Of a stretch of 64,000 nt of DNA, positions 1 to 57,674 are shown one piece after another. The stretch is taken from contig NC_086100.1 in the NCBI RefSeq assembly GCF_963921235.1, forward strand, positions 42,036,001-42,100,000, written 5' to 3'. The notes under the pieces were generated by a model. The model was not told where the DNA came from. It saw only the letters and a program-made list of their open reading frames with translations, and ran no database searches. Position numbers and translations under genes: made by a program. Numbering within the stretch: the stretch's first letter is position 1; every line of letters begins with the position of its first letter. The stretch comes from Mobula hypostoma (lineage: Eukaryota).

Positions 1-3000
1 TGGGACAGGAGGTCCGGGAAGAAAGACAAGGAGGGGGGGGTGACCCAGAGGATGGGCAAGAGGTATATTCAGAGGGACAGAGGGAGAAAAAGGAGAGTGA
101 GAGAAAGAATGTGTGCATAAAAATGAGTAACAGATGGGGTACGAGGGGGAGGTGGGGCCTTAGCGGAAGTTAGAGAAGTCGATGTTCATGCCATCAGGTT
201 GGAGGCTACCCAGACGGAATATAAGGTGTTGTTCCTCCAACCTGAGTGTGGCTTCATCTTTACAGTAGAGGAGGCCATGGATAGACATGTCAGAATGGGA
301 ATGGGATGTGGAATTAAAATGTGTGGCCACTGGGAGATCCTGCTTTCTCTGGCGGACAGAGCGTAGATGTTCAGCAAAGCGGTCTCCCAGTCTGCGTCAG
401 GTCTCACCAATATATAAAAGGCCACATCGGGAGCACCGGACGCAGTATATCACCCCAGTCAACTCACAGGTGAAGTGATGCCTCACTGGAAGGACTGTTT
501 GGGGCCCTGAATGGTGGTAAGGGAGGAAGTGTAAGGGCATGTGTAGCACTTGTTCCGCTTACACGGATAAGTGCCAGGAGGGAGATCAGTGGGGAGGGAT
601 GGGGGGGACGAATGGACAAGGGAGTTGTGTAGGGAGCGATCCCTGCGGAATGCAGAGAGAGGGGGGGAGGGAAAGATGTGCTTAGTGGTGGGATCCCGTT
701 GGAGGTGGCGGAAGTTACGGAGAATAATATGTTGGACCCGGAGGCTGGTGGGGTGGTAGGTGAGGACCAGGGGAACCCTATTCCTAGTGGGGTGGTGGGA
801 GGATGGAGTGAGAGCAGATGTACGTGAAATGGGGGAGATGCATTTAAGAGCAGAGTTGATAGTGGAGGAAGGGAAGCCCCTTTCTTTAAAAAAGGAAGAC
901 ATCTCCCTCGTCCCAGAATGAAAAGCCTCATCCTGAGAGCAGATGCGGTGGAGACGGAGAAATTGCGAGAAGGGGATGGCGTGTTTGCAAGAGACAGGGT
1001 GAGAAGAGGAATAGTCCAGATAGCTGTGAGAGTCAGTAGGCTTATAGTAGACATCAGTGGATAAGCTGTCTCCAGAGACAGAGACAGAAAGATCTAGAAA
1101 GGGGAGGGAGGTGTCGGAAATGGACCAGGTAAACTTGAGGGCAGGGTGAAAGTTGGAGGCAAAGTTAATAAAGTCAACGAGTTCTGCATGCGTGCAGGAA
1201 GCAGCGCCAATGCAGTCGTCGATGTAGCGAAGGAAAAGTGGGGGACAGATACCAGAATAGGCACGGAACATAGATTGTTCCACAAACCCAACAAAAAGGC
1301 AGGCATAGCTAGGACCCATACGGGTGCCCATAGCTACACCTTTAGTTTGGAGGAAATGGGAGGAGCCAAAGGAGAAATTATTAAGAGTAAGGACTAATTC
1401 CGCTAGACGGAGCAGAGTGGTGGTAGAGGGGAACTGATTAGGTCTGGAATCCAAAAAGAAGCGTAGAGCTTTGAGACCTTCCCGATGGGGGATGGAAGTA
1501 TATAAGGACTAGACATCCATGGTGAAAATAAAGCGGTGGGGGCCAGGGAACTTAAAATCATCGAAAAGTTTAAGAGCGTGAGAAGTGTCACGAACATAGG
1601 TCGGAAGGGATTGAACAAGGGGTGATAAAACAGTGTCGAGGTATGCAGAAATGAGTTCGGTGGGGCAGGAGCAAGCTGAGACAATAGGTCAGCCAGGACA
1701 GGCAGGTTTGTGGATCTTGGGTAGGAGGTAGAAACGGGAAGTGCGGGGTGTGGGAACTATAAGGTTGGTAGCAGTGGATGGGAGATCCCCTGAGCGGATA
1801 AAGTCGGTGATGGTGTGGGAGACAATGGCCTGGTGCTCCTTAGTGGGGTCACGATCAAGGGGTAAATAAGAGGAGGTATCCGCGAGTTGTCGCTGTGCCT
1901 CGGCAAGGTAGAGGTCAGTACGCCAGACTACAACAGCACCCTCCTTATCAGCGGGTTTAATAATAAGGTTAGGATTAGTGCGGAGGGAGTGGAGAGCAGA
2001 GCGTTCCAAAGGAGTGAGGTTGGAATGGGGACAAGGTGCGGTGAAGTCGAGACGGTTGATGTCCCGTCGGCAGTTAGCAATAAAGAGATCCAGAGCAGGC
2101 AGAAGACCAGAGCGGGGTGTCCATGAAGAAGAGGAGGGTTGAAGACGGGAGAAGGGGTCATCGGTGGGGGTGGAAGAGTCCTTGCCGAAGAAGTAGGCTC
2201 GGAGACGGCGGAAGAAAAGTTCCGCATCATGGCGAACACGGAACTCGCTGAGGTGTGGGCGAAGGGGCCCTTACTGAGAACAGAGCATTCTGCCTCCGAC
2301 AGTTGAAGGTCGGAGGGGATGGTAAAGACCCGGCACGGATGACAGCTGGGATCAGAGGGGGGAGGGGGGAGGCTGGGGGTGTCAGTGGAGAGGGGAGGGT
2401 TGGGGTGAGAGGAAGATGGAGCCTCTGAGGGCCCAGGAGTTGACGGTGGGATCTGAGGAAGACGGGGCTGCGGAGTGGTGGTGGGGGAAGGGGAGACGGG
2501 AGTCACAATAGCAGCACATAAAGACCCGGCCTGGAGTTCAAGGCTGGAATCTTGAGAGCTGGGATCAGAGGCGGGAGGGGGGAGGCTGGGGGTGTCAGTG
2601 GAGAGGGGAGGGTTGGGGTGAGAGGAAGATGGAGCCTCTGAGGGCCCAGGAGTTGACGGTGGGATCTGAGGAAGACGGGGCTGCGGAGTGGTGGTGGGGG
2701 AAGGGGAAACGGGAGTCACAATAGCAGCACATAAAGACCCGGCCTGGAGTTCAAGGCTGGAGTCGCAGTTGGTGGTTGCGCAATCACTTCGAATGTGTCC
2801 ATGGTCGTTGCTGGAGTCCGGGTTTTGAATATGTCCTGAGGTGTTGGAGCCGCCGAGATCAATGGCAGGGGCCGCAATTTGAAGTTCATGCCTGCTAGCG
2901 TCGGGGCCAGCAGGCTCTGGAGTCCGTAGATGTAGAATCTTGCGATCTTTGCCTAACATGACAAAGTCAAAAAAACGGCGATTGCAGGCGTGAATCTGAC

Positions 3001-8029: not shown

Positions 8030-8450
8030 ACTAGTACCTCCAAAAGGACCACAAATTTGTTGTGCTTTGGAGGCTTGCATACCTCAATGACTCCTACGTT
8101 GGCAGGGGTCAGGGCTTTATGCTTTGGTTCTTGGAAGGGTCATCTACGCCAAACAGGTCAAAGTGTAGAGGACAGACTAAGAGTGGTCCCCTGGTCGTCC
8201 AGGTTCAGGGACTCAGCTCGGGCTAACAACCCTGACTGGTAAAACAAAACTGTTACTGAAACAGCAATGAAGACTCTTTCTACATCTGAGTGCTTCAATA
8301 TTCCTGAGTCTCCACCAGGGACTTGCACGACTGACAGTAGTGGAAACCCAAAGGAAGCTACTAACACAATGAAAGAAGCCCTGAACACTGCCAGAGATGG
8401 AGGACATTCATTGCTGCCCTAAATATCAGCAGCATTACGAGCAGCAAGGA
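8030..8450 (+). mobile_element. Probable RTE-type LINE/SINE fragment
   Basis: GC-richer island containing gggctaacaaccctgactggtaaaacaaaactgttactgaaac, which resembles RTE 5' regions. Recognised from memory only. Confidence 0.35.
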
Positions 8451-8799
8451 AGGACATTGGTATACTGTCTTACAATTTCAATGAACCAGTGAAAAAGACA
8501 GTGACATACAAAAAATTACTCAGAGAAATTATTAAGGGAAAAAAGGCGGTACTCTGACACAAGATACATCAATCTTAGTGTTATCCTGAGAAAAAAGCTA
8601 ATGGTTCTGTCAGCATACACTTCCCCACAATAGAGATTCCTTTATTTTATAGGCTCCAAGGGGAAAATCTCATCTTTGAGATTTAATCCGTATATAAAAG
8701 AAAATACCATAAAAATGTAAAGAACTTATTATATATCCAAATGTCACAGGTTACTAAATCACCATCATCCAGTAAACTATAGTATAAAGTAGCTCATAC

Positions 8800-8955
8800 C
8801 TGAAAAAGCACCTTAAAAGAAGGGTGTACTGTGGGATTAGGGACAAATGGCAGTGCATAAAACGGCAAAAACTCTGTTGTCTGACTTAATGCTGCACCTC
8901 TAGTTTCTAGGTATGTTTTGAAATGAGAAGTTCTTTCTTCCAAATCATCTTTGTC
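8800..8955 (-). CDS. ARMC9: ARMC9 coding exon 4 ([52 protein letters not shown])
   Basis: 156 nt, cag acceptor, gtatga donor, phase 0/0. Matches the ARMC9 motif [30 protein letters not shown]. Confidence 0.95.
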
Positions 8956-11829
8956 CTGTTGAAAAGACATTAGCATTAACAAAAAGAGGTTCAATTAACC
9001 ATGCTTCAATTTAGTAAACACACTTTATTTAACACAGACTTATGTGACTCTTGAGATGCTGTCTGATGTCTTCCATTCAATCAACCATTGCTACTCTACT
9101 TTTCTTTGCAAATTTTCTTTTACGAGATGAGAAACATATATTTTAAATAATTATGTTAATTTCTTGTAGCTAACCACTTGTATCAATTTTTATGCTTCGT
9201 CCACTACTGCATATTTTAGTATGTATATCAATCTGATAAATAGTGTTCATCTAAATTAATAGTCTGTAAAAGTGGTGGTGTCTGCTTCTCACAAAAGAAA
9301 TGATATAGAATGAACAATTATGTATTCTGACCATAAGTTAAAGAGGAAGTTTTCAATAAAAAACAGTAAGTGCTTCAAAAAAGCTCAGCACTTCAGGCCA
9401 CTTCATTAGAACTGTAATGGGGATAAAAGCAGTTTGTAAATCTGCAAAGAATGTGGGGATGGGGCATAGCTAACATAAGGTAAAATGAGGGTGACCATGG
9501 GGAATATGCTATAAAACAGGGTTATCTGTTTAATAAGTGAATGGGTACAGTCAGAAGATGAAGACAGAATAAAGAACGTGGAAGTTGGATAATGTAGAGC
9601 AGAAGAACTAGCCTAGAAGATCAGGTTGGGCATGATCTCCACTCCAAGAACAGTTTCAGTCTTGGCAAAGATACTCCATTTACAACATAACAGTCAGCTA
9701 GGTACCAGAGGAATTCCATCTCAAACACAAAATTATTAAGTGCTGAGATAATTCTGAACTACACGTTTTACCTGTACTTCTGTATCAAATTTTTTATTTT
9801 GTGATTTTACAAATACAGAAAAAAAATCAAAAATATATTCCATTGCAATTCATCACATTCATCTTCTATAGCAGCAACTTTACATCAACCAAGGCAATGT
9901 GACTGCTTGTTACTGAAAGGTACAATGTAATACAACTTAAAAATGTATGTTATATTCTTATAGAGTTAAAAAAGCTGTTTTAAAAAAAAATTCACCATCA
10001 TTATATTAAGTTCCCTGCTAGCACATGATCAGATTCCTCTCAAAGTCAAATCTAAATACAGGTGTGTGCTTCATTTACAGAAGTCAAGCTATGCTAGCAA
10101 ATTTGAAAACATTGCAAACAATACAACCAGTTAAATACCCGAGGAAGAGCTTGCAAACTGAATTTAAATATGGACCCTAGTACTATAGAAGTTCTTTTAA
10201 TATATGCTTCCTTGTTGAAATGGGGTATAGGAAGAAAAATTATTTACAGTTCTTTATGATAATAGAGGATATTTGTTGCAAAGTGGTGAAAGGGTAGACA
10301 GTACAAAGAGAACATCTGTGACTGGCCAAAACCAGATCCAGTGGGTTAATGGGGAAGATAGATGGTGATTATGCTTTTCTGTCTATGTCATGTGTTGTTT
10401 ACCTGGCCATGCCTATAAGTTAGCTTGTACTAATAGTGAGCGAAACGTTGAGCTCATCATAGATGTGTGACTGGTAGAAAATGCAGTAAGTCCAATATTG
10501 ATGTCAATTTGGACATGAAATGTTAACTGTTTTTCCTTCCAAAGATGATGCTGGACTAGCTGAGAGTTTTCACCATTTTTTATGTTGTTTTTTATTTCAG
10601 ATTTTGTGCATTTGATTTTTTATTTGGATTTTCACCTACGTAATTAACATATTCATATCTTGGAATGGGAATTAAACCAAGATCCCTTCAGATGGGTAAT
10701 GAAGAGTAGAATGGGTTATTGCAGATAAAGTGCTGCATCTCTATTAAAATGACTTAACTAGAGATACAGTGAATTGGAAAGCAAATGTCCATGCCATTAC
10801 AGCCAAAATGATACTGGAATTGGTTTTGGGATCCAGAATGCACAACCATTTCTTCATATTACATAAGATGAATTAACTTGACAGAAGGTAGGACAAAGAT
10901 GACAAAGATGACAGAAGGTAGGACAAAGGTAGGACAAAGAGATGGAGTGATAATGGGGGAAATCAGGAGGATATTGAGGTGAATCATCAACTTGACATGT
11001 AGGGATACCTACACTGTTATCTTGCAAAGTTTTAGCACTGTAAATTTAAAAGAAAACTGATATCCAACTTTTATACCCTCATCATTACAAGCACAACATT
11101 AAGATAATTTCCTATGTAATCAGCAGTCCACTAAATTCTCACCAAAGTGATCATTCCCTTTGGTTACCCAATGTGGCAAGTTAAACCAAACGCAAAACAG
11201 TAAGAACTGAACCCAAGACCTTTGGTTGATATGACATGCCTTGAACAACTAGACCATTCCTACCATATTCAACATTTACAAATAAAATCAAGAAAATGTC
11301 CTTGAATTTTTCAGTGATACAGAAATGTGAAACTATTAAAAATACAAAGATAAATCAGCACCATCTGCTGGATAAATTTTGTTACCTCAACACAGCCCAT
11401 TGCTGACAATGAAATATCTACTTGCTTTGGTATTCAGATACAAATGCCCCAGATGTGGCAAATAGCAACCATATTGATTGTCTATTGACAACTAAAGAGC
11501 AATACATCATAGAAATAACATGTGAAAACACATATTTTTCAATTTTGAGCAGGTGATTTAAGTACATGATATAGGTACATTTTGAACTTTATGTCTGTGT
11601 GAAGAACTACTTTTCAACTTGAGAGTTGCTTCTTAAAATGATCTAAATATTAAATACAAGAAAGTGAAGAATGTACAGATTAAGTGCTCCCTCCACACTC
11701 CATACATATTATTCTGGTCAAACATAAAACTTTGTTTCTTGAAGTTTATTCTTTTGATTTAATCAATATCTATATGGTTGCTCTAACTTCTGAAATACAA
11801 AGCTTCCAAAAAGAAATTGTTTTCAAATA

Positions 11830-31713: not shown

Positions 31714-32640
31714 ATAGAAACATAGAAAAACCTACAGCACAATACAGGCCCTTCGGCCCACAGAGCTGTGCCAAACAGGGTCCTACCTTAGAACTACCTA
31801 AGCTCCATGTAGCCATCCAGGAGTCTCTTAAAAGACCCTATCGTTTCCGCCTCCACCACCGCTGCTGGCAGCCTATTCCACGCACTGACCACTCTCTGCG
31901 TAAAAAACTTACCCCTGATATCTCCCCTCTACCTGCTTCCAAGCACCTTAAAACTATGTCCTCTCCTGCTAGCCACTTCAGCCCCGGGGAAAAGCCTCTG
32001 ACTATCCACACGATCAATGCCTCTCGTTAACTTGTACACCTCTATCAGGACACCTCTCATCCTCCGTCGCTCCAAGGAGAAAAGGCCGAGTTCACTCAAC
32101 CTATTCTCATAAGGCATGCTCCCCAATCCAGACAACATCCTTGTAAATCTCCTCTGCACCCTTTCTATAGTTTCCACGTCCTTCCTGTAGTGAGGCGACC
32201 AGAATTGAGCACAGTACTCCAAGTGGGGTCTGACCAGAGTCCTTTATAGCTGCAACATTACCGCTCTGCTTTTAAACTCAATCCCATGATTGATGAAGGT
32301 CAATGCACTGTATGCCTTCTTAACCAGAGTCAACCTGCGTAGCAGCTTTGAGTGTCCTATGGACTCAGACCCCAAGATCCCTCTGATCCTCCACACTGCC
32401 AAGAGTCTTACCATTAATACAATATTCTGCCATCATATTTGACCTACCAAAATCAACCACCTCACACTTCTCTGGTTTGAACTCCATCTGCCACTTCTCG
32501 GGCCAGTTTTGCATCCTATCAATGTCCTGTTGTGACCTCTGACAGCCCTCTACACTATCCACAACACCCTCAACCTTTGTGTCATCAGCAAATTTACTAA
32601 CCCATCCATCCAGGTCATTTATAAAAGTCGCAAGAGTAAT
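31714..32640 (-). mobile_element. CR1 LINE 3' fragment
   Basis: [40 protein letters not shown]. Confidence 0.88.
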
Positions 32641-36721: not shown

Positions 36722-39450
36722 CATAGAGTATTCGGCCCACAATGTTGTGCTGACCATGTAGCCTACTCTAGAAACTGCCTAGAATTTCCTTACTGCATAG
36801 CCCTCTATTTTTCTAAGCTCAATGTAGCTATCTAAGAGCCTCTTAAAAGATCCTATTGTATCTGCCTCCACCACCATCGCTGGCAGTGCATTTCACACAC
36901 CCACCACTCTGTGTGAAAAAAATTACTTCTGACATCCCCCTTGTACCTACTTCCAAGCACCTTAAAGCTAAGTCCTTGCGTGTTAGCCATTTCAGCCCGG
37001 GAAAAAGCCTCTGGCTATCCACACGATCAATACCTCTCATCATCTTATACATGTCTATCAGGTCACCTCTCATCCTCCATCACTCCAAGGAAAACAGGCC
37101 AAATTCACTTAACCTATTCTCATAAGGTACACCTTCCAATCCAGGCAACATCCTTGTAAATTTCCTCTGCACTCTCTCTATAGTATCCACATCCTTTCTG
37201 CAATGAGGTGACCAGAATTGAACACAGTACTCCACATGGGGCCTAACTAAGGTCTTGTATAGCTTTAACATCACCTCACAGCTCTTGAACTCAATCCCAC
37301 GGTTGATGAAGGCCATCACACCATACGCCTTCTCAACAATACTGTCAACCTACACAGCAGCTTTGAGTGTCCTATGGACATGGACCTCAAGATCTCTCTG
37401 ATCCTCCATATTGCCAAGAGTCTTACCATTAATAATATATTATTTCTTCAAATTTGACCTACCGAAATGAACCACTTCACACTTATCTGGGTTGAACTCC
37501 ATCTGCCATTTCTCAGCCCAGTCCTATTGATGTCCAGCTATAACCTCTGACAACTCTCCAAACTATCCACAACGCCCCCCCCCAACCTTTGTGTCATCAG
37601 CAAACTTACTAACCCACCCTTCTACTTCCTCATCCAGGTTATTTATAAAAGTCAGAAAGAGGTGGGGTCCCATAACAGATCCCTGCAGAACACCACTGGT
37701 CACCATCCTCCATGCAGAATACAACCATCTACAACCACCCTTTGCCTTCTGTGGGCAAGCCAATTCTCGATCCACAAAGCAAGGTCTCCTTGCATCCCAT
37801 GCTTCAGTACTTTCTGAAGGAATCTTACATGGGGAACCTTATCAAATCCCTTACTGAAATCCATATACACTACAGCCACTGTTTTGCCTTCATCAATGTG
37901 TTTTGTTACCTCCTCAAAGAATTCAAATAGGCTTGTAAGGCACAACCTACGCTTGACAAAGCCAATGCTGACTGACCATGCCTAATCCAATTATGTTTCT
38001 CCCAATGCTCATAAATTCTGCCTCTTAGGATCTTCTCCAACAACTTGCCTACCACTGAAGTAAGGCTCACTGGTCTATAATTTTCTGCGTTATCTCTACT
38101 ACCTTTCTTGAACAAGAGAACAACATTTGCAATCTTCCAATCCTCTGGTACTTCTCCCACCCCTATTGATAATGCAAAGATCATCGCCAGAGGCTCAGCA
38201 ATCTTCTCCCTCATTTTCCACAGTAGCCTGGGGTATATCTCGTCTGGTCCTAGAGACTTATCTAACAATACCTTTCAACAGCTCCAACACATCCTCTTTC
38301 TTAATGTCTATACACTCAAGCGTTTCCGTCTGTTGTAAGTCTTCCCCACAATTGCCAAAGTCCTTTACACTGGTGAACACTGAAGCAAAGTATTCATTAA
38401 ATACCTCTGCTGCCTCCTACGGCTCCATGCATGTTTCCACCATTGCTCCTGGTTGGTTCTATTCTCACACAGCTCATCCTCTTGCACTTCACAGACTTGT
38501 AGAATACCTTGGGGTTTTCCTTAATCCTGCTCACCAAGGCCTTCTTGTGGCCCCTTCTAGCTCTCCTAATTTAATTCTTGAGCTCTTTTCTGGCACTCTT
38601 GTAATTTTCTAGAGCTATAACAGTACCTAGTTTCTTGAACCTTTCATAAGCTTTTCTTCTCTTCTTAACTATATTTCTACATCCTTTGTACACCATGGTT
38701 CTTTAACTCTACCATCCTTTCCCTGCCTCAATGGAACATACCTATGCAGAATTCTATGCAAATGTTCCCTGAACATTTGCCACATTTCTGCCATGCATTT
38801 CCCTGAGAACATCTACTCCCAATTTCCTGCCTAATGGCATCATATTTCCTGCTGCCCCAATTAAATGTTTTCCCAAATTGTTTGCTCCTATCCCTCTCCA
38901 GCGTTATGGTAAAGGAGATAGGGTTGTGATCACTATTTCTAAAATGCTTTCCCACTGAGAGATCTGACACCTGCGACCAGGTTCATTTCCCAATACCAGA
39001 TCAAGTACAGACTCTCCTCTAGCTGGCTTATCTACATATTGCGTCAGTAAACCTTCCTGAACACACCTAACAAACTCCACCCCATCTGAACGCCTTGCTC
39101 TAAGGAGATGCCAGTCTATATGAGGAAAGTTAAAGTCACCCAACACAACAACCCTATTATTATTGCACCATTCCAGAAACTGCCTTTCTATCTGCTCCTT
39201 GATGTCTCTGTTACTGTTGGGGGGGGGGGGGTCTATAAAACACCTAGTAGAATTATTGCCCCCTTTCCTGTTTCTGACTTCCACCCACAATGACTCAGCA
39301 GACCATCCCTCCATGACTTCCTCCTTTTCTGCAGCCGTAATACTATCCCTGATTAGCAATGCCATGCCCCCATCGCTTTTGCCTCTCTTCCTGTGCCCCT
39401 TTTGAAACATTTGCCATATTCAGCAGCTATTTTTGCTCCTGAGTCTCCAT
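36722..39450 (-). mobile_element. CR1 LINE ORF2 (APE endonuclease and RT), decayed
   Basis: [89 protein letters not shown] across ORFs from 36843 to 39410. Confidence 0.92.
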
Positions 39451-42970: not shown

Positions 42971-43644
42971 CAGACATCCCACCTCTCCTGGAACTTCCGG
43001 GAGTCTCCTGCATATTGATAGTGGCTCCCTGATGCCCGCAAATTATATACGATATCACGGAAATCAATTTTTTTTGAGAGTGAGTGAGAGAAAAGCAAGA
43101 GAGAGTGCTGCGGGGNNNNNNNNNNNNNNNNNNNNNNNNNNNNNNNNNNNNNNNNNNNNNNNNNNNNNNNNNNNNNNNNNNNNNNNNNNNNNNNNNNNNN
43201 NNNNNNNNNNNNNNNNNNNNNNNNNNNNNNNNNNNNNNNNNNNNNNNNNNNNNNNNNNNNNNNNNNNNNNNNNNNNNNNNNNNNNNNNNNNNNNNNNNNN
43301 NNNNNNNNNNNNNNNNNNNNNNNNNNNNNNNNNNNNNNNNNNNNNNNNNNNNNNNNNNGTACATCACCCCTGCCTACTAGGAGTCAAAATAATGACAGTG
43401 TTGCTCGCTGCACTGTTTGCAACAGTGACTTTTCTATTGCCCATGGTGGGTTAAGACTGTGAAAGACATGTTGAGGTAAGTTTAACAGGTGTCATTCGTT
43501 CATTAGCATAGCTAACGTTATTTAAACTAGCTGGCCAGCTACTAAGGAGCCACTCTATTGCAGACGTCCCACCTCTCCCAGAAGTCTCCCGCAAATTGAT
43601 GGTGCTACCTCCCTGAAATCAGTTTTTGCAGGGTGGGATGTCTG
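42971..43644. mobile_element. Non-autonomous TIR DNA transposon (hAT-like) with a 6-bp TSD, spanning the assembly gap
   Basis: TIRs cagacatcccacc and ggtgggatgtctg; cgttta on both sides (42965-42970, 43645-43650); internal direct copy of the left end at 43561. Confidence 0.75.
43116..43358. other. Assembly gap (243 N)
   Basis: Run of N. Confidence 1.
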
Positions 43645-50711: not shown

Positions 50712-51548
50712 TGTCAGTTTTCCAATAACCTCTGGAATTTGAATAAATTAGTTACTCAACACTGATTTCAAAGACGTTGTTTCCAGATGTTTTGTGAGTT
50801 GCCAGTGGTCACTCCATTTTAACTTTCTTTTCACGTGGTAAGAACAACTCTAATTGGCTCATTACCACATTGGAATAAGCAAAGTGTCCTTATAAACATA
50901 TGCCTGCCTGCCTGCTCTACAATTTACTGCTGTGAAGCCTAGTGGTTTTTTCCTGTACAGAACAGGTGTGAATTACATGACCTACGAGAGATGTCCCATG
51001 CATTCATAGTGGATGCCAGCGCTAACTAGACAATATCCCTGTGGACCTCTGCATCCACATGCATTGCTCGTGCCACTGTTTGTCCCACGCCCAATTAGAG
51101 AGGAGGTGACGTAGCATCCACACCAGGACCACCAGACTCGAAATAGTTACTTTCCCCAGGCATTAAATCTGTTCAACACCTCCACCATTTCTCTATTATT
51201 TCCCCTCATTCTCTTTATGTACAGCCTTGCGTTACTTTATGGACATACAATCAATCTGTATATAAACTAAGTTGTGCAGATGTACTTATTGTTTATTTTT
51301 GAATTATTGTTGTGTTCTTGTATTTTTTTGTGCTGCATCAGATCTAGAGCAACAATGATTTTGTTCTCCTTGTGCTTGGGTACAGGAAATGACATTAAAA
51401 TCCTTAATCTTAAATAGCATTGACAAAGAAATTACAGGAACAATATTTAACGGAACTAAAGAATTCGGCAGTGGTCTGTATCATATGTTAAGATGTAGTT
51501 CCTTTTATGCGAAAGTGGGTTGCTAATTGAAACATCTGGTTTTTACAG

Positions 51549-51848
51549 GGCAAACCACAAGAAGTGGCATTCAAGTTCTTCCTCAATCGTACTGGTATGA
51601 GCTTCTCTATGGCACAGTGATTCTCATCTTCTGCCTTCTTGTGTGTTTGGTTGGAGCTGATATCTATGCCAAAGCTACCTTCGTAATTTTCATCATTGTT
51701 ATAGTGGTGCTCTGCACAATATTTATTAGCTTTTTTGCAGTGTCACCTAGATCTATTAATATTACAGTGACATCAGGGAATATCACAGAATTTCGAGAGG
51801 GTTTATTTACTGGATTTAATCTGTCAACTCTAAAGAGCAACCTTCCAC
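51549..51848 (+). CDS. SLC12A9: SLC12A9-family exon 4 (GQTTRSGIQVLPQSYWYELLYG...FTGFNLSTLKSNLP)
   Basis: 300 nt, ttttacag acceptor, C|gtaagt donor, phase 1/1. Matches SLC12A9 VLPQGY...LLYG...FTGFN.STLKDNL. Confidence 0.94.
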
Positions 51849-51935
51849 GTAAGTTGATGCAAAAACTACTCGTAATGAAAATTGATGAATTCTAAAGGCC
51901 ATTGTTGACTTAATTGTGTATATTTCAGTTTACTA

Positions 51936-52509
51936 ATTGCCAAAATTTTAAAATTAATCTTGCATGTAAACATGTATTTAATCTAATGTAGACAATTAAT
52001 TTACATTTGCTTAAATATTTCTGAATTTTGATAGCATTTTGCTCAGAACCTTACTGGTTTTTAAGTATCAAATTCACTGGTCACAAGATTTTTGGGGAGA
52101 GTTAGATTTGTATATGTTTTCTGGATTTTGCTTTTCTGTGGTCAGCTATTCATTGAGCAACGACTAATTTTACTTAAGATTGTTTCCATAAGATTGGATG
52201 CTATCTACATAAGAAAGTTAGGGATGCAAACTCATTCCAATTTGCTATTAATCTGATGTTGATTGACTTTATGTTTTTGTTATTGCTAAGTCATGAAATC
52301 ACTTAACATAGAGTTGGGTCAACTTCACGAGCAGGAAGCTTAAGAAATGTGCTGCTTATATTCTTGAGGTTTTTTCCTGATCATGCCGAAATTGTGTGGG
52401 AAGATTGCCATGAGATGAAAAACAGACAGCGACTTCCTTTTTCCATGTATCATGGACTCCAATTGCTCTATATTGTTTAGGCCTATACTATTATTCACAT
52501 TTTTAAAAC
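51936..52509 (+). repeat. Left copy of the ~575-bp direct duplication flanking the HERO-type element
   Basis: Aligns end to end with 55159-55735; about 18 substitutions and 2 small indels by manual count. Confidence 0.95.
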
Positions 52510-55158
52510 CCGCGGAGGGGTCAGGGACTAGGAACCAATCGGGCTGTGCGTAGACCAGAAAAACTATCAAGTGAGCTGAATGTGAGGGAGCCTACATGGC
52601 AGGAAATCCAGGATATCATCGGGAAAGCTAAAGCATCAGCTGCCCCAGGCCCAAGTGGCATACCTTATAAGGTGTATAAGAAATGCCCAAAACTACTTCG
52701 GAGGTCATGAGAAAGATCTGGGCCAAAGGTACTATTCCATCAAGATGGAAATTGGTAGAGGGATGCTTTATTCCAAAGGAAGAGGTTTCTTCCACAATTG
52801 TCCAGTTTAGGACAATTTCTCTCCTGGATGTGGAATGTAAGATTTTCTTTTCTGTGCTCACAAGAAGGCTGACTTCTTACATGACACAGAACCACTATAT
52901 CAACACATCCATCCAGAAAGGCGGTATTTCAGGCTTTTCGGGGTGTCTGGAACACACCTCAATGATTAGCCATTTGATCCGTGAGGCCAAGCAGAAAAAA
53001 GGCGACCTAACAGTTGTCTGGTTAGACCTCGCGAATGCCTACGGGTCTATTCCACATGACCTCATCCGAGAAGGACTCGACCACTACTACATCCCAGTGG
53101 CTATTCGAGACATGATCACCAGCTACCTAGGAGGATTCAAACTCAGATTTACATCAGCCCATTTCCCAACTAGTTGGCAGGACCTCCAGAAGGGGATTCC
53201 AACAGGGTGCACCATCTTCCCCATCCTATTTATTATGGGAACGAACCTCCTATTATCAGCAGCAGAAGATGTAACCCACGGCCCAATGCTGGAGTCAGGC
53301 ATTGTTCAGCCGGCTCTACGAGGGTTCATGGACGACATCACTATAACAACTGTGTCACATGTCCAAGCAAGATGGGTATTGGAAACCCTGGGTGATGTAG
53401 CCACTTGGGCGAGGATGTCCTTCAAGGCCAAGAAGTCCAGGTGCATGGTGATCAGAAAGGGCAAAGTTACTAGCGAGTTTAGCCTCCAAGTTCAGGGTGA
53501 GGTCATCCCTTCCATGGAAGATAACCCAATGCTTGGGGAAGTGGTTTAATATGTCACTGACAGATGGGGCCAATGTCACCAATGCTGTGAAACAGACAGA
53601 TGAATGGCTGAAGAAGATCGACAAATCAGGACTTCCGGGTAAATTCAACACCTGGCTGTACCAATACGGCCTTCTGCCCAGGCTTCTCTGGCTCTTCACA
53701 CTTTGAGTTCCCCATGACTGCCATAGAGGGCATCGAGAGGAAAACCAGCAAGCACCTTCGGAGATGGTTGGGAGTTCCCCCAAGCTTCTCTTCAGTGGAC
53801 CTCTATATTTGATCTGGGCAACTGCAGCTTGCCCTGTCATCTGTTGTGGAGGAAGTCAAGGTGGCAAAATGCAGAGCCTTATTAAGCTTGAGAGATTCCA
53901 ATGACGTCTTGGTAAAGCAAGCAGGCGTTACAACCAGATCTGTGCACAAGTGGGCAGCCAACGCAGCTGTGGAGCCGGCAGTGTGTTCTCTGAAGCTGCG
54001 CAATATTATCGGCAACCCCTGTGTCGGGCGGCAAGGCCTTGGCTCAGTTCACTTCCAGCAGTGGGGAAACACAAGCATAAGGAACAGGCGAGACATGATA
54101 CAAGCAGAAGTATGGATCTGTGAGGAAGAGAAGCGGATGTCAAAGGCAGTGGAACAAAGGCAGAATGCCTGGACAAAATGGGATCTGCCTAAGCAAGATC
54201 TCATGGACAGAGTTATGGAGACTGGAGCCCTTCCGTATTTCCTTCCTCTTGCAATCCATGTATGACACCCTTCCTTCACCATTACATCTGTACACATGAG
54301 GGATGAGAGAGGACCCAAACTGTAAGCTCTGTGGTCAAAAGGGGACACTGGCTCATATACTGTCCGGGTGTAGAACAGCTCTAACTCAAGGATGGTATAG
54401 GTGGTGCCATGATAAGGTGCTTCTGGCTCTTGCTGACACACTAGAGGGAGAGAGATGCAAGAAGAGGACAGCTGGCACAGATTTGAGGAAGGCCATCACC
54501 TTTATCAAAGAGGGAGCCAGGCCTTTCCTAACCAAACAACCAAAGCCCAATCTGCTGCTAACGGCCTGGTCCTGGGAGATGAGGGTCGATGAGGGAAGGA
54601 GGTTGCAGTTCCCAGATGTGGTGCACACAACCCTATGCCCGGACATTGTACTGTGGTCAACCGAAGACAAAGTAATTCTGGTTGAGCTGACTGTGCCGTG
54701 GGAGGAGGGATGGGAAGAGGCCTACGAGAGAAAGGCCTTGAAGTATCAGCCCTTAGTGCAGGGGTGTAAAGACAAGGGATGGCAGGCATGGTTGTTCCCT
54801 GTGGAGATCGGCTGCAGAGGTTTCCCAGCCAAATCAGCATGGCAGTTGTTGTCAGATCTGGGCCTGGACGAAAGGAGAAAAAAAACAAGCAGCTCGTAGG
54901 ATGGGGGAAGAGGCAGAACGACCTCTTGTTGGATTTGGAGCAGGCGAGAGGAGGGAAGCTGGAAGCCAGGAGCAGATAGGCAGTGATTTGGCCACCACTG
55001 CCGGCCCACCAACTGGAGAGTGTTGTGGTTAAGGGTCGAAACACTCTGTGAAGGTTGGGAACCACCTGATGACATCTGTTCCTGGCTGAAGTCTACAGTT
55101 ACCTTACAAGGTAACTGGAGAATGTACCCTAACAGGTGTATGTAACAAGTACATGTAC
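52510..55158 (+). mobile_element. 5'-truncated HERO-type (R2 group) non-LTR retrotransposon: RT, CCHC knuckle and restriction-like endonuclease
   Basis: APGPSGIPYKVYKKCP, FRTISLLDVECKIF, SIQKGGISGFSGCLEH, WLDLANAYGSIPH, FMDDITI; CKLCGQKGTLAHILSGC, YRWCHDKVL, PDIVLW...LVELTVPWEE...KALKY. Several frameshifts and stops; no poly(A) tail. Confidence 0.9.
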
Positions 55159-55735
55159 ATTGCCAAAAATTTTAATATTAATCTTGCATGTAAACATGTA
55201 TTTAATCTAATGTAGGCAATTAATTTACATTTGCTTAAATATTTCTGAATTTTGATAGCATTTTGCTCGGAACCTTACTGCTTTTTAAGTATCAAATTCA
55301 CTTGTCACAAGATTTTTGGAGAGAGTTAGATTTGTATATGTTTTCTGGATTTTGCTTTTCTGTGGTCAGCTATTCATTGAGCAACGACTAATTTTACTTA
55401 AGATTGTTTCCGTAAGATTGGATGCTATCTACATTAGAAAGTTAGGGATGCAAACTCGTTCCAATTTGCTATTAATCTGATGTTGATTGACTTTATGTTT
55501 TTGTTATTGCTGAGTCATGAAATCACTTAACATAGAGTTGGGTCAATTTCATGAGCAGGAAGCTTACGAAATGTTCTGCTTATATTCTTGAGATTTTTTT
55601 TTCTGATCATGCCGAAATTGTGTGGGAAGATTGCCATGAAATGAAAAACAGACAGCGACTTCCTTTTTCCATGTATCATGGACTCCAATTGCTCAATATT
55701 GTTTAGGCCTATACTATTATTCACATTTTTAAAAC
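55159..55735 (+). repeat. Right copy of the ~575-bp direct duplication
   Basis: Matches 51936-52509; ends 18 nt upstream of exon 5. Confidence 0.95.
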
Positions 55736-55753
55736 TTTCATTTTTCTTTGCAG

Positions 55754-55861
55754 CTAAGTATGTAGCAGACTACACAACTGGTACGATGATGACTTTTGCT
55801 GCTGTATTTGCTGTTATGTTCAATGGATGCACCGGTATTATGGCTGGATCCAATATGTCAG
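55754..55861 (+). CDS. SLC12A9: SLC12A9-family exon 5 ([36 protein letters not shown])
   Basis: 108 nt, ttctttgcag acceptor, G|gtaagg donor; [14 protein letters not shown] signature. Confidence 0.95.
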
Positions 55862-56259
55862 GTAAGGCTCAAACCTATACTTGAAGTATAAATTATTTCC
55901 ATAAATTAATAGTACATTGTTTGCAATCAAATTATTATATGCAATCTCTGTTATAAAAGAGCAGCTTGATACAGAGCATTATTAACTATTAAATCTGAAC
56001 TGTAAAGCAAACTATTTGCCTACATTAGGGTATCAGCAAGATTTATTGCCTGATAAACATGTTTATGACTGTGCTTTATCAGCGTCTGTTGACTGGAATT
56101 AAAAATATAATGAACAAAGTGGCACTTCCTTTGCTGAATTGTTAAACTATATTGGTTGTAAGTGTAATTTTATCTCTGCATCAAGCAACATTCAATGAAG
56201 TTTGGGTTGTAAAATAAGTTAACTAAAATCATGAATCCTTGTCTTGCTATCATTACCAG

Positions 56260-56371
56260 GTGACTTAAAGAATCCCAGCTATTCTATTCCCAGAGGCACA
56301 ATAACAGCTGTAATTTTTACATACATTGTGTACAATATTTTATCTCTCATGGTCAGCTGCACATGTGATAG
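56260..56371 (+). CDS. SLC12A9: SLC12A9-family exon 6 (GDLKNPSYSIPRGTITAVIFTYIVYNILSLMVSCTCDR)
   Basis: 112 nt, ccag acceptor, AG|gtgagt donor; GDLK.P..SIP.GT CCC motif. Absent from the ORF track. Confidence 0.94.
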
Positions 56372-57674
56372 GTGAGTCTATATTTCTTATGACTGATTTT
56401 TTTTCTCATGCCCGATAACTCCAAGTGGTCAGCCCTTTGTAATACGATTACAAAGGGAACTTGATAATCATATATTCATTCAGTTTTGCTTGTAGAATTG
56501 CCATAACAATTTTGAAAGTACTGAGAAGAAACTTATTGATTCAAGAAAACAATGATGTATCATATTACTCAAGGCTTTATGAGTTACCTTCGTCATTTTA
56601 ACTATATGCTCATTCCATGTTTGAGTTGGAATTACTCTCAGGAATTTCAGCAACAATCCAACATTACATTTAAAAATAAAATTTTGCTGAACATAAAGAG
56701 TTGGATGCTTGTCAACAATGGTTGAGTTTTAAATGTTTTGTGGCTAGAGTACTCAATAACATTGATATTCTATTGATACTGTCAATGGTTTAATATATAT
56801 TGTTACCAAAGGCACTGTCTTGTTAGTGTTAACTGATAATGCTATTGCATTCAGAAACTGCTGTGCATTAGATATTTATTGATGATTTAAAATGAAAACT
56901 CTTCGCAGCACAGTTCAAAGATGGATTTTGTACTCGGACGACAAAGCAATGCAGTTTTATAACTAGTAGGTTTTCATTTGAAGTTCAACTTTTGAGATAA
57001 ACATTGAAAGTATTCCTTATTATTGGGTCCTTACTGCAACAATAATTTATCTTTTTAAATAAGCATTTCTTATGTAAAGTGCATTCAAAAGCATTTTTCA
57101 GATAGAAAGTAAATCTTCTAGAGGAACTCAGCAGACCAAACAGCATCTGTCGAGGGGAGCGGTGGGAGGTTGTCTGCATCAGGATTGCCCTGAATGGTAA
57201 CATTTCCTTTTCCCCTCACTAGTGCTGTTTGAACTGCTGTGTTCCTTCATCAGTTTTATCTTTTCTCCCAGGTTCCATGGTCTTCAGCCTTTTGTTTTTA
57301 GAAAGAAAACTTCCTTAGTTTCATATCTGGGAAAGATTGAGTTTGAATTTAAAGGAGAGAAAAATCTGTTAAACAAGAGAAATAAAAATAAGAATTTATT
57401 TTCTGTATTGAAAGCTATCTAACTGAGTTCCATTGGGTTAAATTTTATTATAAACAAATCATATTACCTGGACAAATATTTGGTGCACAATTTGCTGGTC
57501 TTTGACAGCAATTCTGAGCATAATTTCCAAACTTGTGCCCAAGAAATGGAATTAAGATGGGAGGAGCTGTGTTTTTTTGACATTGCCAACGTATTGCTTA
57601 GGGAGGATATACTTGGTGGTGGTGAGCGAGAGTCATCTACTGAGGGAACCTCTATATAAGAGGATGAACGAGGG

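What the first reader, a model, noticed from the sequence alone, without database searches (positions are those of the whole stretch)
51936..55735. HERO-type RLE retrotransposon flanked by a ~575-bp target-site duplication
Seen: the 2.65-kb element (52510-55158) sits exactly between two direct copies of otherwise unique slc12a9 intron-4 sequence (51936-52509 and 55159-55735). The copies differ by about 3-4%, so they have aged independently, as has the frameshifted ORF. There is no poly(A) tail; the 3' end (...gtaacaagtacatgtac) runs directly into the duplicate. Established: target-primed reverse transcription usually leaves TSDs under ~30 bp, and the 126-bp TSD of rotifer R9 is a noted outlier among RLE elements. 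Inference: the second-strand nick or join occurred ~575 bp from the first nick. If that is a family property, this is an insertion mechanism that duplicates sub-kilobase host segments and could duplicate exons or enhancers.
Basis: partly seen in the sequence, partly recalled or inferred. Interest (0 to 1): 0.82.

Follow-up and report, generated by a model that had tools for sequence, protein, structure and literature searches.

The report
LINE insertion with 575-bp target duplication
A decayed jumping gene (an R2-like, HERO-type retrotransposon) sits in an intron between two copies of about 575 bases of host DNA that it duplicated on landing; the structure is real, but this outcome of retrotransposon insertion is already documented, so it is a clean natural example, not a new mechanism.

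Summary
Unique intron sequence at 51936-52509 recurs at 55159-55735 (96.4% identity). The two copies abut both ends of a 2.65-kb, 5'-truncated, frameshifted LINE that encodes a reverse transcriptase, a CCHC knuckle and a restriction-like endonuclease (RLE).

Contigs from public runs show the left junction in a second organism (about 1% diverged). Two more distant relatives (about 6-7% diverged) have one copy of the segment and no element, so duplication and insertion go together. The copy divergence (3.1% substitutions) dates the event between those two splits. The segment is single-copy. A mis-join is unlikely, although no listed contig bridges the right junction.

Best reading: target-primed reverse transcription began at a bottom-strand nick at 51935/51936. 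It was completed at a top-strand break 574 bp downstream, and the truncated cDNA joined there through a 2-nt microhomology.

This is not a new mechanism. TSDs of hundreds of bp to kilobases are published for Dualen-4b (median 900 bp), for L1 (up to 5.3 kb) and for avian R2 with a crippled second-strand nick (about 1 kb).

Whether it is a family property could not be tested. None of 11 relatives' loci in other species shows it. An unchecked scan note reports an L1 with a 115-bp TSD elsewhere in this genome.

The parts
51741..51848 (+). Upstream host exon (108 nt); 5' splice site GT at 51849
   Evidence: AG/GT boundaries and an open frame read from the sequence. Gene family inferred from the next exon.
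51936..52509 (+). Left copy of the duplicated target segment (574 nt); its last 2 nt (AC) are shared with the element sequence
   Evidence: Single-copy depth. AC microhomology from the family loose-end consensus (table 7) and from L004.
52510..55158 (+). 5'-truncated, decayed RLE-type (HERO-like) non-LTR retrotransposon, sense to the host gene, no poly(A)
   Evidence: Aligns at 73% identity to L004 8405-11072. About 720 nt of ORF plus the 5' UTR are missing relative to L004.
52683..53546 (+). Reverse transcriptase ORF fragment (288 aa, FMDD motif)
   Evidence: PF00078, E 4.3e-17. Best PDB sequence matches are R2 proteins, E 6e-9.
54303..54896 (+). CCHC zinc knuckle (C-X2-C-X7-H-X4-C) plus restriction-like endonuclease fragment (198 aa)
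   Evidence: Conserved H36, D96, P113-D114, E128, T130 and K144 in 30 homologues. AF2 model with pLDDT 85. Foldseek top 6 hits are R2 proteins, followed by PD-(D/E)xK cap-snatching nucleases.
54897..55158 (+). 3' UTR with a block conserved across relatives (GAAAC...CCUGAUGACAUCU, plus a hairpin with compensatory changes)
   Evidence: Alignments A2 and A3. No Rfam match.
55159..55735 (+). Right copy of the duplicated target segment (577 nt), continuous with the native 3' splice region
   Evidence: Contigs specific to this copy, with 0 differences, in X1 (table 8).
55754..55861 (+). Downstream host exon (108 nt) of an SLC12-family transporter; it starts 18 nt after the end of the duplication
   Evidence: Translation. 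All 17 PDB hits are SLC12A2 or SLC12A3, with weak E-values because the query is 35 aa.

Best explanation
This is one retrotransposition event of a non-site-specific RLE LINE (HERO-like) that produced an unusually long target-site duplication.

Inferred sequence of events:
1. The element's endonuclease nicked the bottom strand between 51935 and 51936 (pre-insertion coordinates). That 3'-OH primed cDNA synthesis from the intact 3' end of the element RNA.
2. Synthesis stopped about 0.7 kb or more short of the RNA's 5' end.
3. No top-strand nick was made next to the first one. The cDNA 3' end instead joined a top-strand 3' end 574 bp downstream, through a 2-nt AC microhomology. That break lay 18 nt before the next exon, and was either a host-derived single-strand break or a distant cleavage by the element.
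4. Strand-displacement and fill-in synthesis copied the 574 bp between the two breaks on both sides of the insert.

The event happened after the split from organisms C and F and before the split of organisms A and B. Since then the element has decayed and the two copies have diverged by 3.1%.

Shown: the structure, the empty site, the dating, the junction microhomology and the RLE and RT identity. Inferred: the order of the nicks, who made the second break, and strand displacement.
For: - The repeat abuts both element ends exactly and is in direct orientation.
- The element's 3' end is complete up to where similarity to relative L004 ends. The 5' end is truncated, with AC shared between target and element (table 7). 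This is the polarity TPRT predicts.
- Organism C: one 3086-nt contig runs 51496-52066 and then 55300-56392 with 5 letters between, so it has a single copy and no element. Summed depth over the two copies equals one copy in C and F, and two or more in A and B (tables 2, 5c, 8).
- Organism B: a contig bridges the left junction (52293-52565).
- The copy divergence of 3.1% lies between the A-B divergence (about 1%) and the A-C/F divergence (about 5-7%).
- Mechanistic precedent in an RLE LINE: avian R2 with compromised second-strand nicking still inserts, with TSDs of about 1 kb on the sense strand of transcribed DNA (PMC13486585). Here too the second strand is the sense strand of a transcribed gene.
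- Further precedents: Dualen-4b and L1.
Against: - It is a single event, so the source of the second break cannot be read from the sequence.
- No listed independent contig bridges the right junction.
- The empty sites in C and F could in principle be revertants made by recombination between the two copies. The divergence dating argues against this.
- An RT template switch onto local RNA would leave the same final structure.
Confidence: 0.75

Rival explanations
1. There was no distant second nick. After copying the truncated element RNA, the reverse transcriptase switched template onto local nascent or intron RNA of the host gene (or onto the displaced DNA strand) at the position equal to 52509. 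It copied about 575 nt back towards the first nick, and the resulting cDNA was joined to upstream DNA by homology. Under this reading the left copy is a retro-copy.
For: - The element and the gene are in the same orientation, so nascent sense RNA would be present at the site.
- The right edge of the duplication lies 18 nt upstream of the 3' splice site, and the duplication covers about 85% of an original intron of about 680 nt (coordinates).
- The 2-nt microhomology fits template jumping, which is known for R2-type RTs (general knowledge).
Against: - Nothing in the sequence requires it. The outcome is identical to the staggered-break model.
- The best yUnAy branch-site candidate (ttcac, A at 55723) lies 12 nt inside the duplication, so the edge does not coincide with a trimmed lariat end.
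- The published long TSDs are explained without an RNA switch.
Confidence: 0.1
2. Two unrelated events. Either a tandem duplication of the 575-bp segment arose first and the element later inserted exactly at its junction, or the element inserted with a short or no TSD and later unequal recombination duplicated the flank.
For: Tandem duplications of this size do occur. Only presence or absence in four organisms was sampled.
Against: - Both boundaries of the duplication coincide to the nucleotide with the element's ends.
- No sampled organism has the duplication without the element.
- Unequal exchange would give A-E-A-E, not A-E-A.
Confidence: 0.04
3. Assembly artefact: two haplotypes, one with and one without the insertion, were joined head to tail, creating a false duplication.
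For: - The right junction is not bridged by any listed independent contig.
- The X1 contig over 51992 carries the right-copy state (G) (table 3).
Against: - Organism B, which is not the source (about 1% different), has a contig across the left junction and contigs for both copies. Summed depth over the copies is about twice the flank depth in A, and at least twice in B.
- There is no gap at either junction (the only N run is 43116-43358).
- The 3.1% divergence between the copies exceeds the A-B divergence.
Confidence: 0.03

Closest known systems
Avian R2 (RLE LINE) insertions when protein-mediated second-strand nicking is compromised (PMC13486585, 2026)
   Same: RT plus ZnK plus RLE protein. 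Insertions complete without a proximal second nick and carry heterogeneous TSDs of about 1 kb. The second strand is the sense strand of transcribed DNA. Truncated cDNAs are joined by end-joining or microhomology.
   Different: That is an engineered, rDNA-specific system in human cells with mutant proteins. Here it is a natural, fixed germline insertion of a non-site-specific element in a gene intron. Whether its protein normally makes a proximal second nick is unknown.
Dualen-4b_cRei in Chlamydomonas mutation-accumulation lines (PMC9977147)
   Same: A LINE that carries an RLE. More than half of new insertions are flanked by duplications over 50 bp (median 900 bp), which the authors read as TSDs.
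   Different: Dualen also has an APE endonuclease, and the authors suggested that the dual endonucleases cause the long TSDs. In the relatives with long ORFs checked here (L004, L011), Pfam finds only the RT and no APE domain. In Dualen it is a family property; here there is only one case.
R9 of bdelloid rotifers (126-bp TSD; Gladyshev and Arkhipova 2009, cited)
   Same: An R2-superclade RLE LINE with a TSD far above the usual length.
   Different: R9's TSD has a fixed length at a specific rDNA site, which implies a defined second cleavage site. Here the length is about 4.6 times greater, at a non-specific site, and is not shown to recur.
Human L1 insertions with large TSDs (under 10% exceed 100 bp in HeLa; median 1.5 kb, up to 5.3 kb, in NER-deficient cells; PMC5223499)
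   Same: TPRT completed at a distant second break. That paper already discusses the duplication of functional host sequence and later loss by recombination between the TSDs.
   Different: L1 uses an APE endonuclease and a poly(A) tail. Those were cell-culture events, not a fixed insertion shared between species.
HERO clade of RLE non-LTR retrotransposons (HERODr/Tn/Fr, HERO-n_BF, HERO-1_SP)
   Same: A single ORF with an RT followed by a CCHC motif and an RLE. Many non-site-specific insertions. Relatives occur in fish, lancelets and bivalves.
   Different: Clade membership was not tested by RT phylogeny. The knuckle spacing is X7, not the X8 quoted for HERO. Two relatives carry an N-terminal Cys-His motif, which HERO is said to lack.

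Membership tests
RLE-type non-LTR retrotransposon (R2/R4/NeSL/CRE/HERO group) | LINE-type reverse transcriptase domain | tested here: met
   PF00078, E 4.3e-17. The closest solved sequences are R2 proteins (E 6e-9), ahead of L1 ORF2p.
RLE-type non-LTR retrotransposon (R2/R4/NeSL/CRE/HERO group) | C-terminal CCHC zinc knuckle followed by a PD-(D/E)xK restriction-like endonuclease | tested here: met
   The motif CKLCGQKGTLAHILSGC, with conserved PD114, E128 and K144. AF2 model with pLDDT 85. Foldseek's best matches are R2Tg, R2Pm and R2Bm over about 200 columns, probability 1.0. Sequence-only searches of the PDB found nothing.
RLE-type non-LTR retrotransposon (R2/R4/NeSL/CRE/HERO group) | No N-terminal APE endonuclease | tested here: inconclusive
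   The window copy is 5'-truncated. The ORFs of relatives L004 (749 aa) and L011 (737 aa) show only RVT_1 in Pfam.
HERO clade | RT groups with reference HERO elements in a phylogeny | not tested
   No reference HERO sequences were available through the tools.
HERO clade | No Cys-His motif upstream of the RT (PMC2790886) | tested here: inconclusive
   The window copy lacks its N-terminus. The closest relative, L004, has no such motif in its 328 N-terminal residues. L011 and L013 have C-X3-C-X8-H-X5-C near the N-terminus.
HERO clade | Mostly non-site-specific insertion (PMC4640811) | tested here: met
   Flanks of other family copies disagree (loose-end consensus agreement 0.38-0.41 at the 3' end). 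This copy lies in unique intron DNA, and the relatives' loci have unrelated flanks.
Long-TSD TPRT insertions | The duplicated host sequence abuts both ends of the insert, is in direct orientation, and is single-copy elsewhere | tested here: met
   single-copy depth.
Long-TSD TPRT insertions | The empty site carries exactly one copy of the segment | tested here: met
   Organism C: one contig runs collinear through a single copy. Organism F: the depth equals one copy, and both outer borders are continuous with the flanks.
Long-TSD TPRT insertions | Long TSDs recur among copies of the same family (as in R9 and Dualen-4b) | not testable with these tools
   No other same-family copy with flanks could be fetched. 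In more distant relatives, 0 of 11 independent loci have an adjacent flanking repeat of 40 bp or more. The same script recovers this locus as a positive control.

The most novel reading that the evidence does not exclude
This HERO-like family, which seems to have only an RLE, may routinely complete insertion at distant second-strand breaks and so leave sub-kilobase TSDs, as Dualen-4b does. If so, long TSDs would be a latent property of RLE LINEs that lack a dedicated proximal second-nick mechanism. They would not be a consequence of Dualen's dual endonucleases. With thousands of copies, such a family would be a steady source of small tandem-like duplications in a vertebrate genome.
Probability: 0.12. 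Interest if true: 0.55.

Novelty: new member of a known kind. Interest (0 to 1): 0.3.

Why it matters
This is a clean natural counterpart to what has so far been seen mostly in culture, in mutation-accumulation lines and in engineered R2 systems. An RLE LINE insertion was completed at a second-strand break about 575 bp away, became fixed, and is shared between related organisms, while relatives still carry the empty site. It shows that such events survive in a vertebrate germline.

The long duplication also left the native branch-site, polypyrimidine and 3' splice region intact next to the exon, even though one break lay only 18 nt from that exon.

It does not reveal a new mechanism. It would gain weight only if a genome-wide survey showed that long TSDs are frequent in this family.

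Tried and rejected
- Same-family copies with flanks could not be obtained. The protein search with the RLE piece gave a best identity of 79% on a 1.5-kb contig. The metagenome scan gave one 1.3-kb contig. Logan contigs of the repeat are only 130-300 nt. Notes from other windows carry no sequence.
- Eleven look-ups of relatives' loci gave 11 independent loci and no adjacent long flanking repeat. L004 was also searched for a short TSD, and none was recognisable.
- Sequence-only searches of the RLE piece, and of a 30-sequence profile, against the PDB found nothing. Only the fold search did.
- Pfam on single 35-aa exons gave nothing. The specific slc12a9 assignment was not tested.
- The 600-bp direct repeat at 31902-32507 / 36916-37522 was checked as a possible second long TSD and rejected. 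It is two same-orientation copies of the 3' end of a minus-strand CR1-like LINE.
- The GTGTAT shared by the element's 3' end and the DNA about 20 nt left of the first nick was judged chance. It lies on the wrong side of the nick to act in priming.
- The idea that the right edge marks a trimmed lariat end was considered and not supported. The best branch-site candidate lies 12 nt inside the duplication.
- Rfam finds no ribozyme or other RNA family in the element.
Full report
**Observation.** The direct repeat is real. The repeat finder, a local alignment and blastn place the two copies at 51936-52509 and 55159-55735. The alignment has 577 columns at 96.36% identity, with 18 substitutions (equal transitions and transversions over the slightly longer alignment) and two indel events. 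Neither the segment nor the element between the copies occurs anywhere else in the 64-kb window. The interval 52510-55158 has a different base composition from the surrounding intron (GC 0.44-0.54 versus 0.31-0.34).

**What the insert is.**
- The 288-aa ORF fragment at 52683-53546 is a reverse transcriptase (PF00078, E 4e-17). Its nearest solved relatives are R2 proteins, ahead of L1 ORF2p.
- The 198-aa fragment at 54303-54896 carries C-X2-C-X7-H-X4-C. Among 30 homologues, H36, D96 and D114 are invariant, and P113, E128, T130 and K144 are nearly so.
- Sequence searches of this piece against the PDB were blank. An AlphaFold2 model built on that alignment (pLDDT 85, pTM 0.78) matches the zinc-knuckle and endonuclease part of R2Tg, R2Pm and R2Bm best (about 200 columns, probability 1.0). 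PD-(D/E)xK cap-snatching nucleases come next. The element is therefore an RLE-type LINE.
- It is 5'-truncated. It aligns at 73% nucleotide identity to 8405-11072 of a nearly intact copy in Serrasalmus rhombeus (L004), whose ORF starts about 720 nt further upstream.
- Its coding pieces lie in frames 1, 0, 1, 2, 0. The same pieces are in one frame in L004 up to the last RLE segment, so this copy has at least four frameshifts plus stops.
- Homologues occur in teleosts, lancelets and bivalves, and other copies have heterogeneous flanks. Both fit HERO, the one RLE clade with many non-site-specific members (PMC4640811; PMC9004415).
- Clade membership was not tested by phylogeny. One quoted HERO feature, the absence of a Cys-His motif upstream of the RT (PMC2790886), is equivocal. 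L004 has no such motif, but L011 and L013 have C-X3-C-X8-H-X5-C near the N-terminus.

**Is the structure real, and are the duplication and the insertion linked?** Logan contigs of four public runs were laid on 51300-56400.
- Organism A (X1) matches the flanks with 0-1 differences and is the window's species. It yields contigs specific to the right copy with no differences.
- Organism B (X5, about 1% diverged) has a 273-nt contig that crosses the left junction (52293-52565, with 217 nt of host and 56 nt of element). It also has contigs for both copies.
- Summed depth over the two copies is about twice the flank depth in A, and at least twice in B.
- Organism C (X9, about 6-7% diverged) has a 3086-nt contig that runs 51496-52066 and then continues at 55300-56392 with 5 letters between. 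That is one copy of the segment and no element.
- Organism F (X19, about 5-7% diverged) also has one copy's worth of depth. Its contigs are continuous across both outer borders of the segment.
- The segment is single-copy (depth about 10 in X1), while the element is highly repeated. Its depth rises towards the 3' end, as expected for a 5'-truncating LINE.
- The 3.1% divergence between the copies falls between the A-B divergence (about 1%) and the A-C/F divergence (about 5-7%). This fits one event after the split from C and F and before the A/B split. It argues against the empty sites being revertants.
- No sampled organism has the duplication without the element.
- One limit remains: no listed contig bridges the right junction.

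**Junction anatomy.**
- The element's complete 3' end abuts the start of the right copy, so the priming nick was on the bottom strand between 51935 and 51936.
- Full-length family members read ...CACAGCG-AC-CCGCGG... (loose-end consensus; L004). The target reads ...TAAAAC|TTTCA. The two bases AC at 52508-52509 are therefore shared between target and element. This is a 2-nt microhomology of the kind seen where truncated LINE cDNAs are joined.
- The top-strand break lay 574 bp downstream of the first nick and 18 nt before the next exon.
- The original intron was about 680 nt long (51849-51935, plus the segment, plus 18 nt). The duplication covers about 85% of it.
- The right copy keeps the native branch-site candidate, the polypyrimidine tract and the AG next to the exon.
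- The downstream exon translates to [35 protein letters not shown]. All of its weak PDB hits are SLC12 transporters. The specific slc12a9 assignment was not tested.

**Mechanism.** The best-supported reading is target-primed reverse transcription that was completed at a distant second-strand break. Displacement and fill-in synthesis then copied the 574 bp between the breaks.
- A 2026 study of avian R2, also an RT-ZnK-RLE protein, shows this directly. When the protein's second-strand nick is crippled, insertions still occur but shift from small deletions to TSDs of about 1 kb. The authors attribute these to single-strand breaks on the sense strand of transcribed DNA (PMC13486585). Here too the second strand is the sense strand of a transcribed gene.
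- Dualen-4b_cRei insertions in Chlamydomonas mutation-accumulation lines carry TSDs with a median of 900 bp (PMC9977147).
- L1 insertions in culture have TSDs over 100 bp in under 10% of HeLa events. In NER-deficient cells the median is 1.5 kb and the maximum 5.3 kb. Exon duplication and later loss by recombination between the TSDs are already discussed there (PMC5223499).

**Rivals.**
- An RT template switch onto local nascent or intron RNA, followed by a homology-driven join, would leave the same structure and cannot be excluded (about 0.1). Nothing requires it, and the right edge does not coincide with the best branch-site candidate.
- Two independent events are very unlikely (about 0.04), because both boundaries coincide to the nucleotide.
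- A haplotype mis-join is also unlikely (about 0.03), given the junction contig in organism B, the depth of about two copies or more, and a copy divergence larger than the A-B divergence.

**Is it a family property?** This could not be tested for the same family.
- The protein search found nothing above 79% identity, the metagenome scan found one short contig, and repeat contigs are too short.
- As a wider test, eleven look-ups of relatives (49-65% identity in the RLE piece) gave eleven independent loci in Labeo, Cirrhinus, Serrasalmus, Branchiostoma and unnamed assemblies.
- A self-BLAST for direct repeats bracketing the coding span found none adjacent to any of them. The same script recovers this locus as a positive control (577 bp, 96.4%, at 37 and 263 nt from the coding span).
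- Long TSDs are therefore not general in this group. A family-specific tendency remains open.
- An unchecked scan note reports an L1 with a 115-bp TSD elsewhere in this genome (s1-144682).

**Verdict.** This is a new natural member of a known kind of event. Interest is about 0.3.

Noticed in passing
window 55030-55158 (with L004 10948-11073, L005, L010, L001): The element's 3' UTR has a block conserved across relatives from different species (GTCGAAACAC ... CCTGATGACATCT). It also has a hairpin (CAGTTACC...GGTAACTG) with compensatory changes. GAAAC and CUGAUGA are hammerhead-core-like words, as two other scan notes remarked for this LINE type, but Rfam gives no match at E up to 1.
   Followed up: partly
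window 51849-51935 and 55736-55753: The two breaks lie 87 nt after the 5' splice site and 18 nt before the 3' splice site of an original intron of about 680 nt. The duplication therefore spans about 85% of the intron, and the right copy preserves the native 3' splice region.
   Followed up: partly
window 31902-32507 and 36916-37522: A 600-bp direct repeat, 5 kb apart, at 80-86% identity. It is two same-orientation copies of the 3' end of a minus-strand CR1-like LINE (ORFs with FADDTK and ...LGLFSLERRRMRG...), not a TSD or an LTR pair.
   Followed up: partly
window 51323-51371: A short, very highly repeated segment (summed contig depth in the thousands in all four runs). In other copies it is preceded by a long T run, which suggests the tail of a minus-strand SINE or LINE.
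   Followed up: no
L013 9956-10552 and 10927-14469 (Branchiostoma): A 5'-truncated copy of a related element lies directly upstream, head to tail, of a full-length copy with an intact 1180-aa ORF.
   Followed up: no
L011 ORF residue 30 and L013 ORF residue 91: Relatives carry an N-terminal C-X3-C-X8-H-X5-C motif, although HERO elements are described as lacking Cys-His motifs upstream of the RT. The closest relative, L004, has none.
   Followed up: partly
window 2340-2764: A tandem duplication of a 212-nt unit at 98% identity.
   Followed up: no
window 51992: The window has A here, but contigs of all four organisms, including the same species (X1), have G, as does the right copy. This is either a private variant of the source individual or a contig that follows the other copy.
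   Followed up: no
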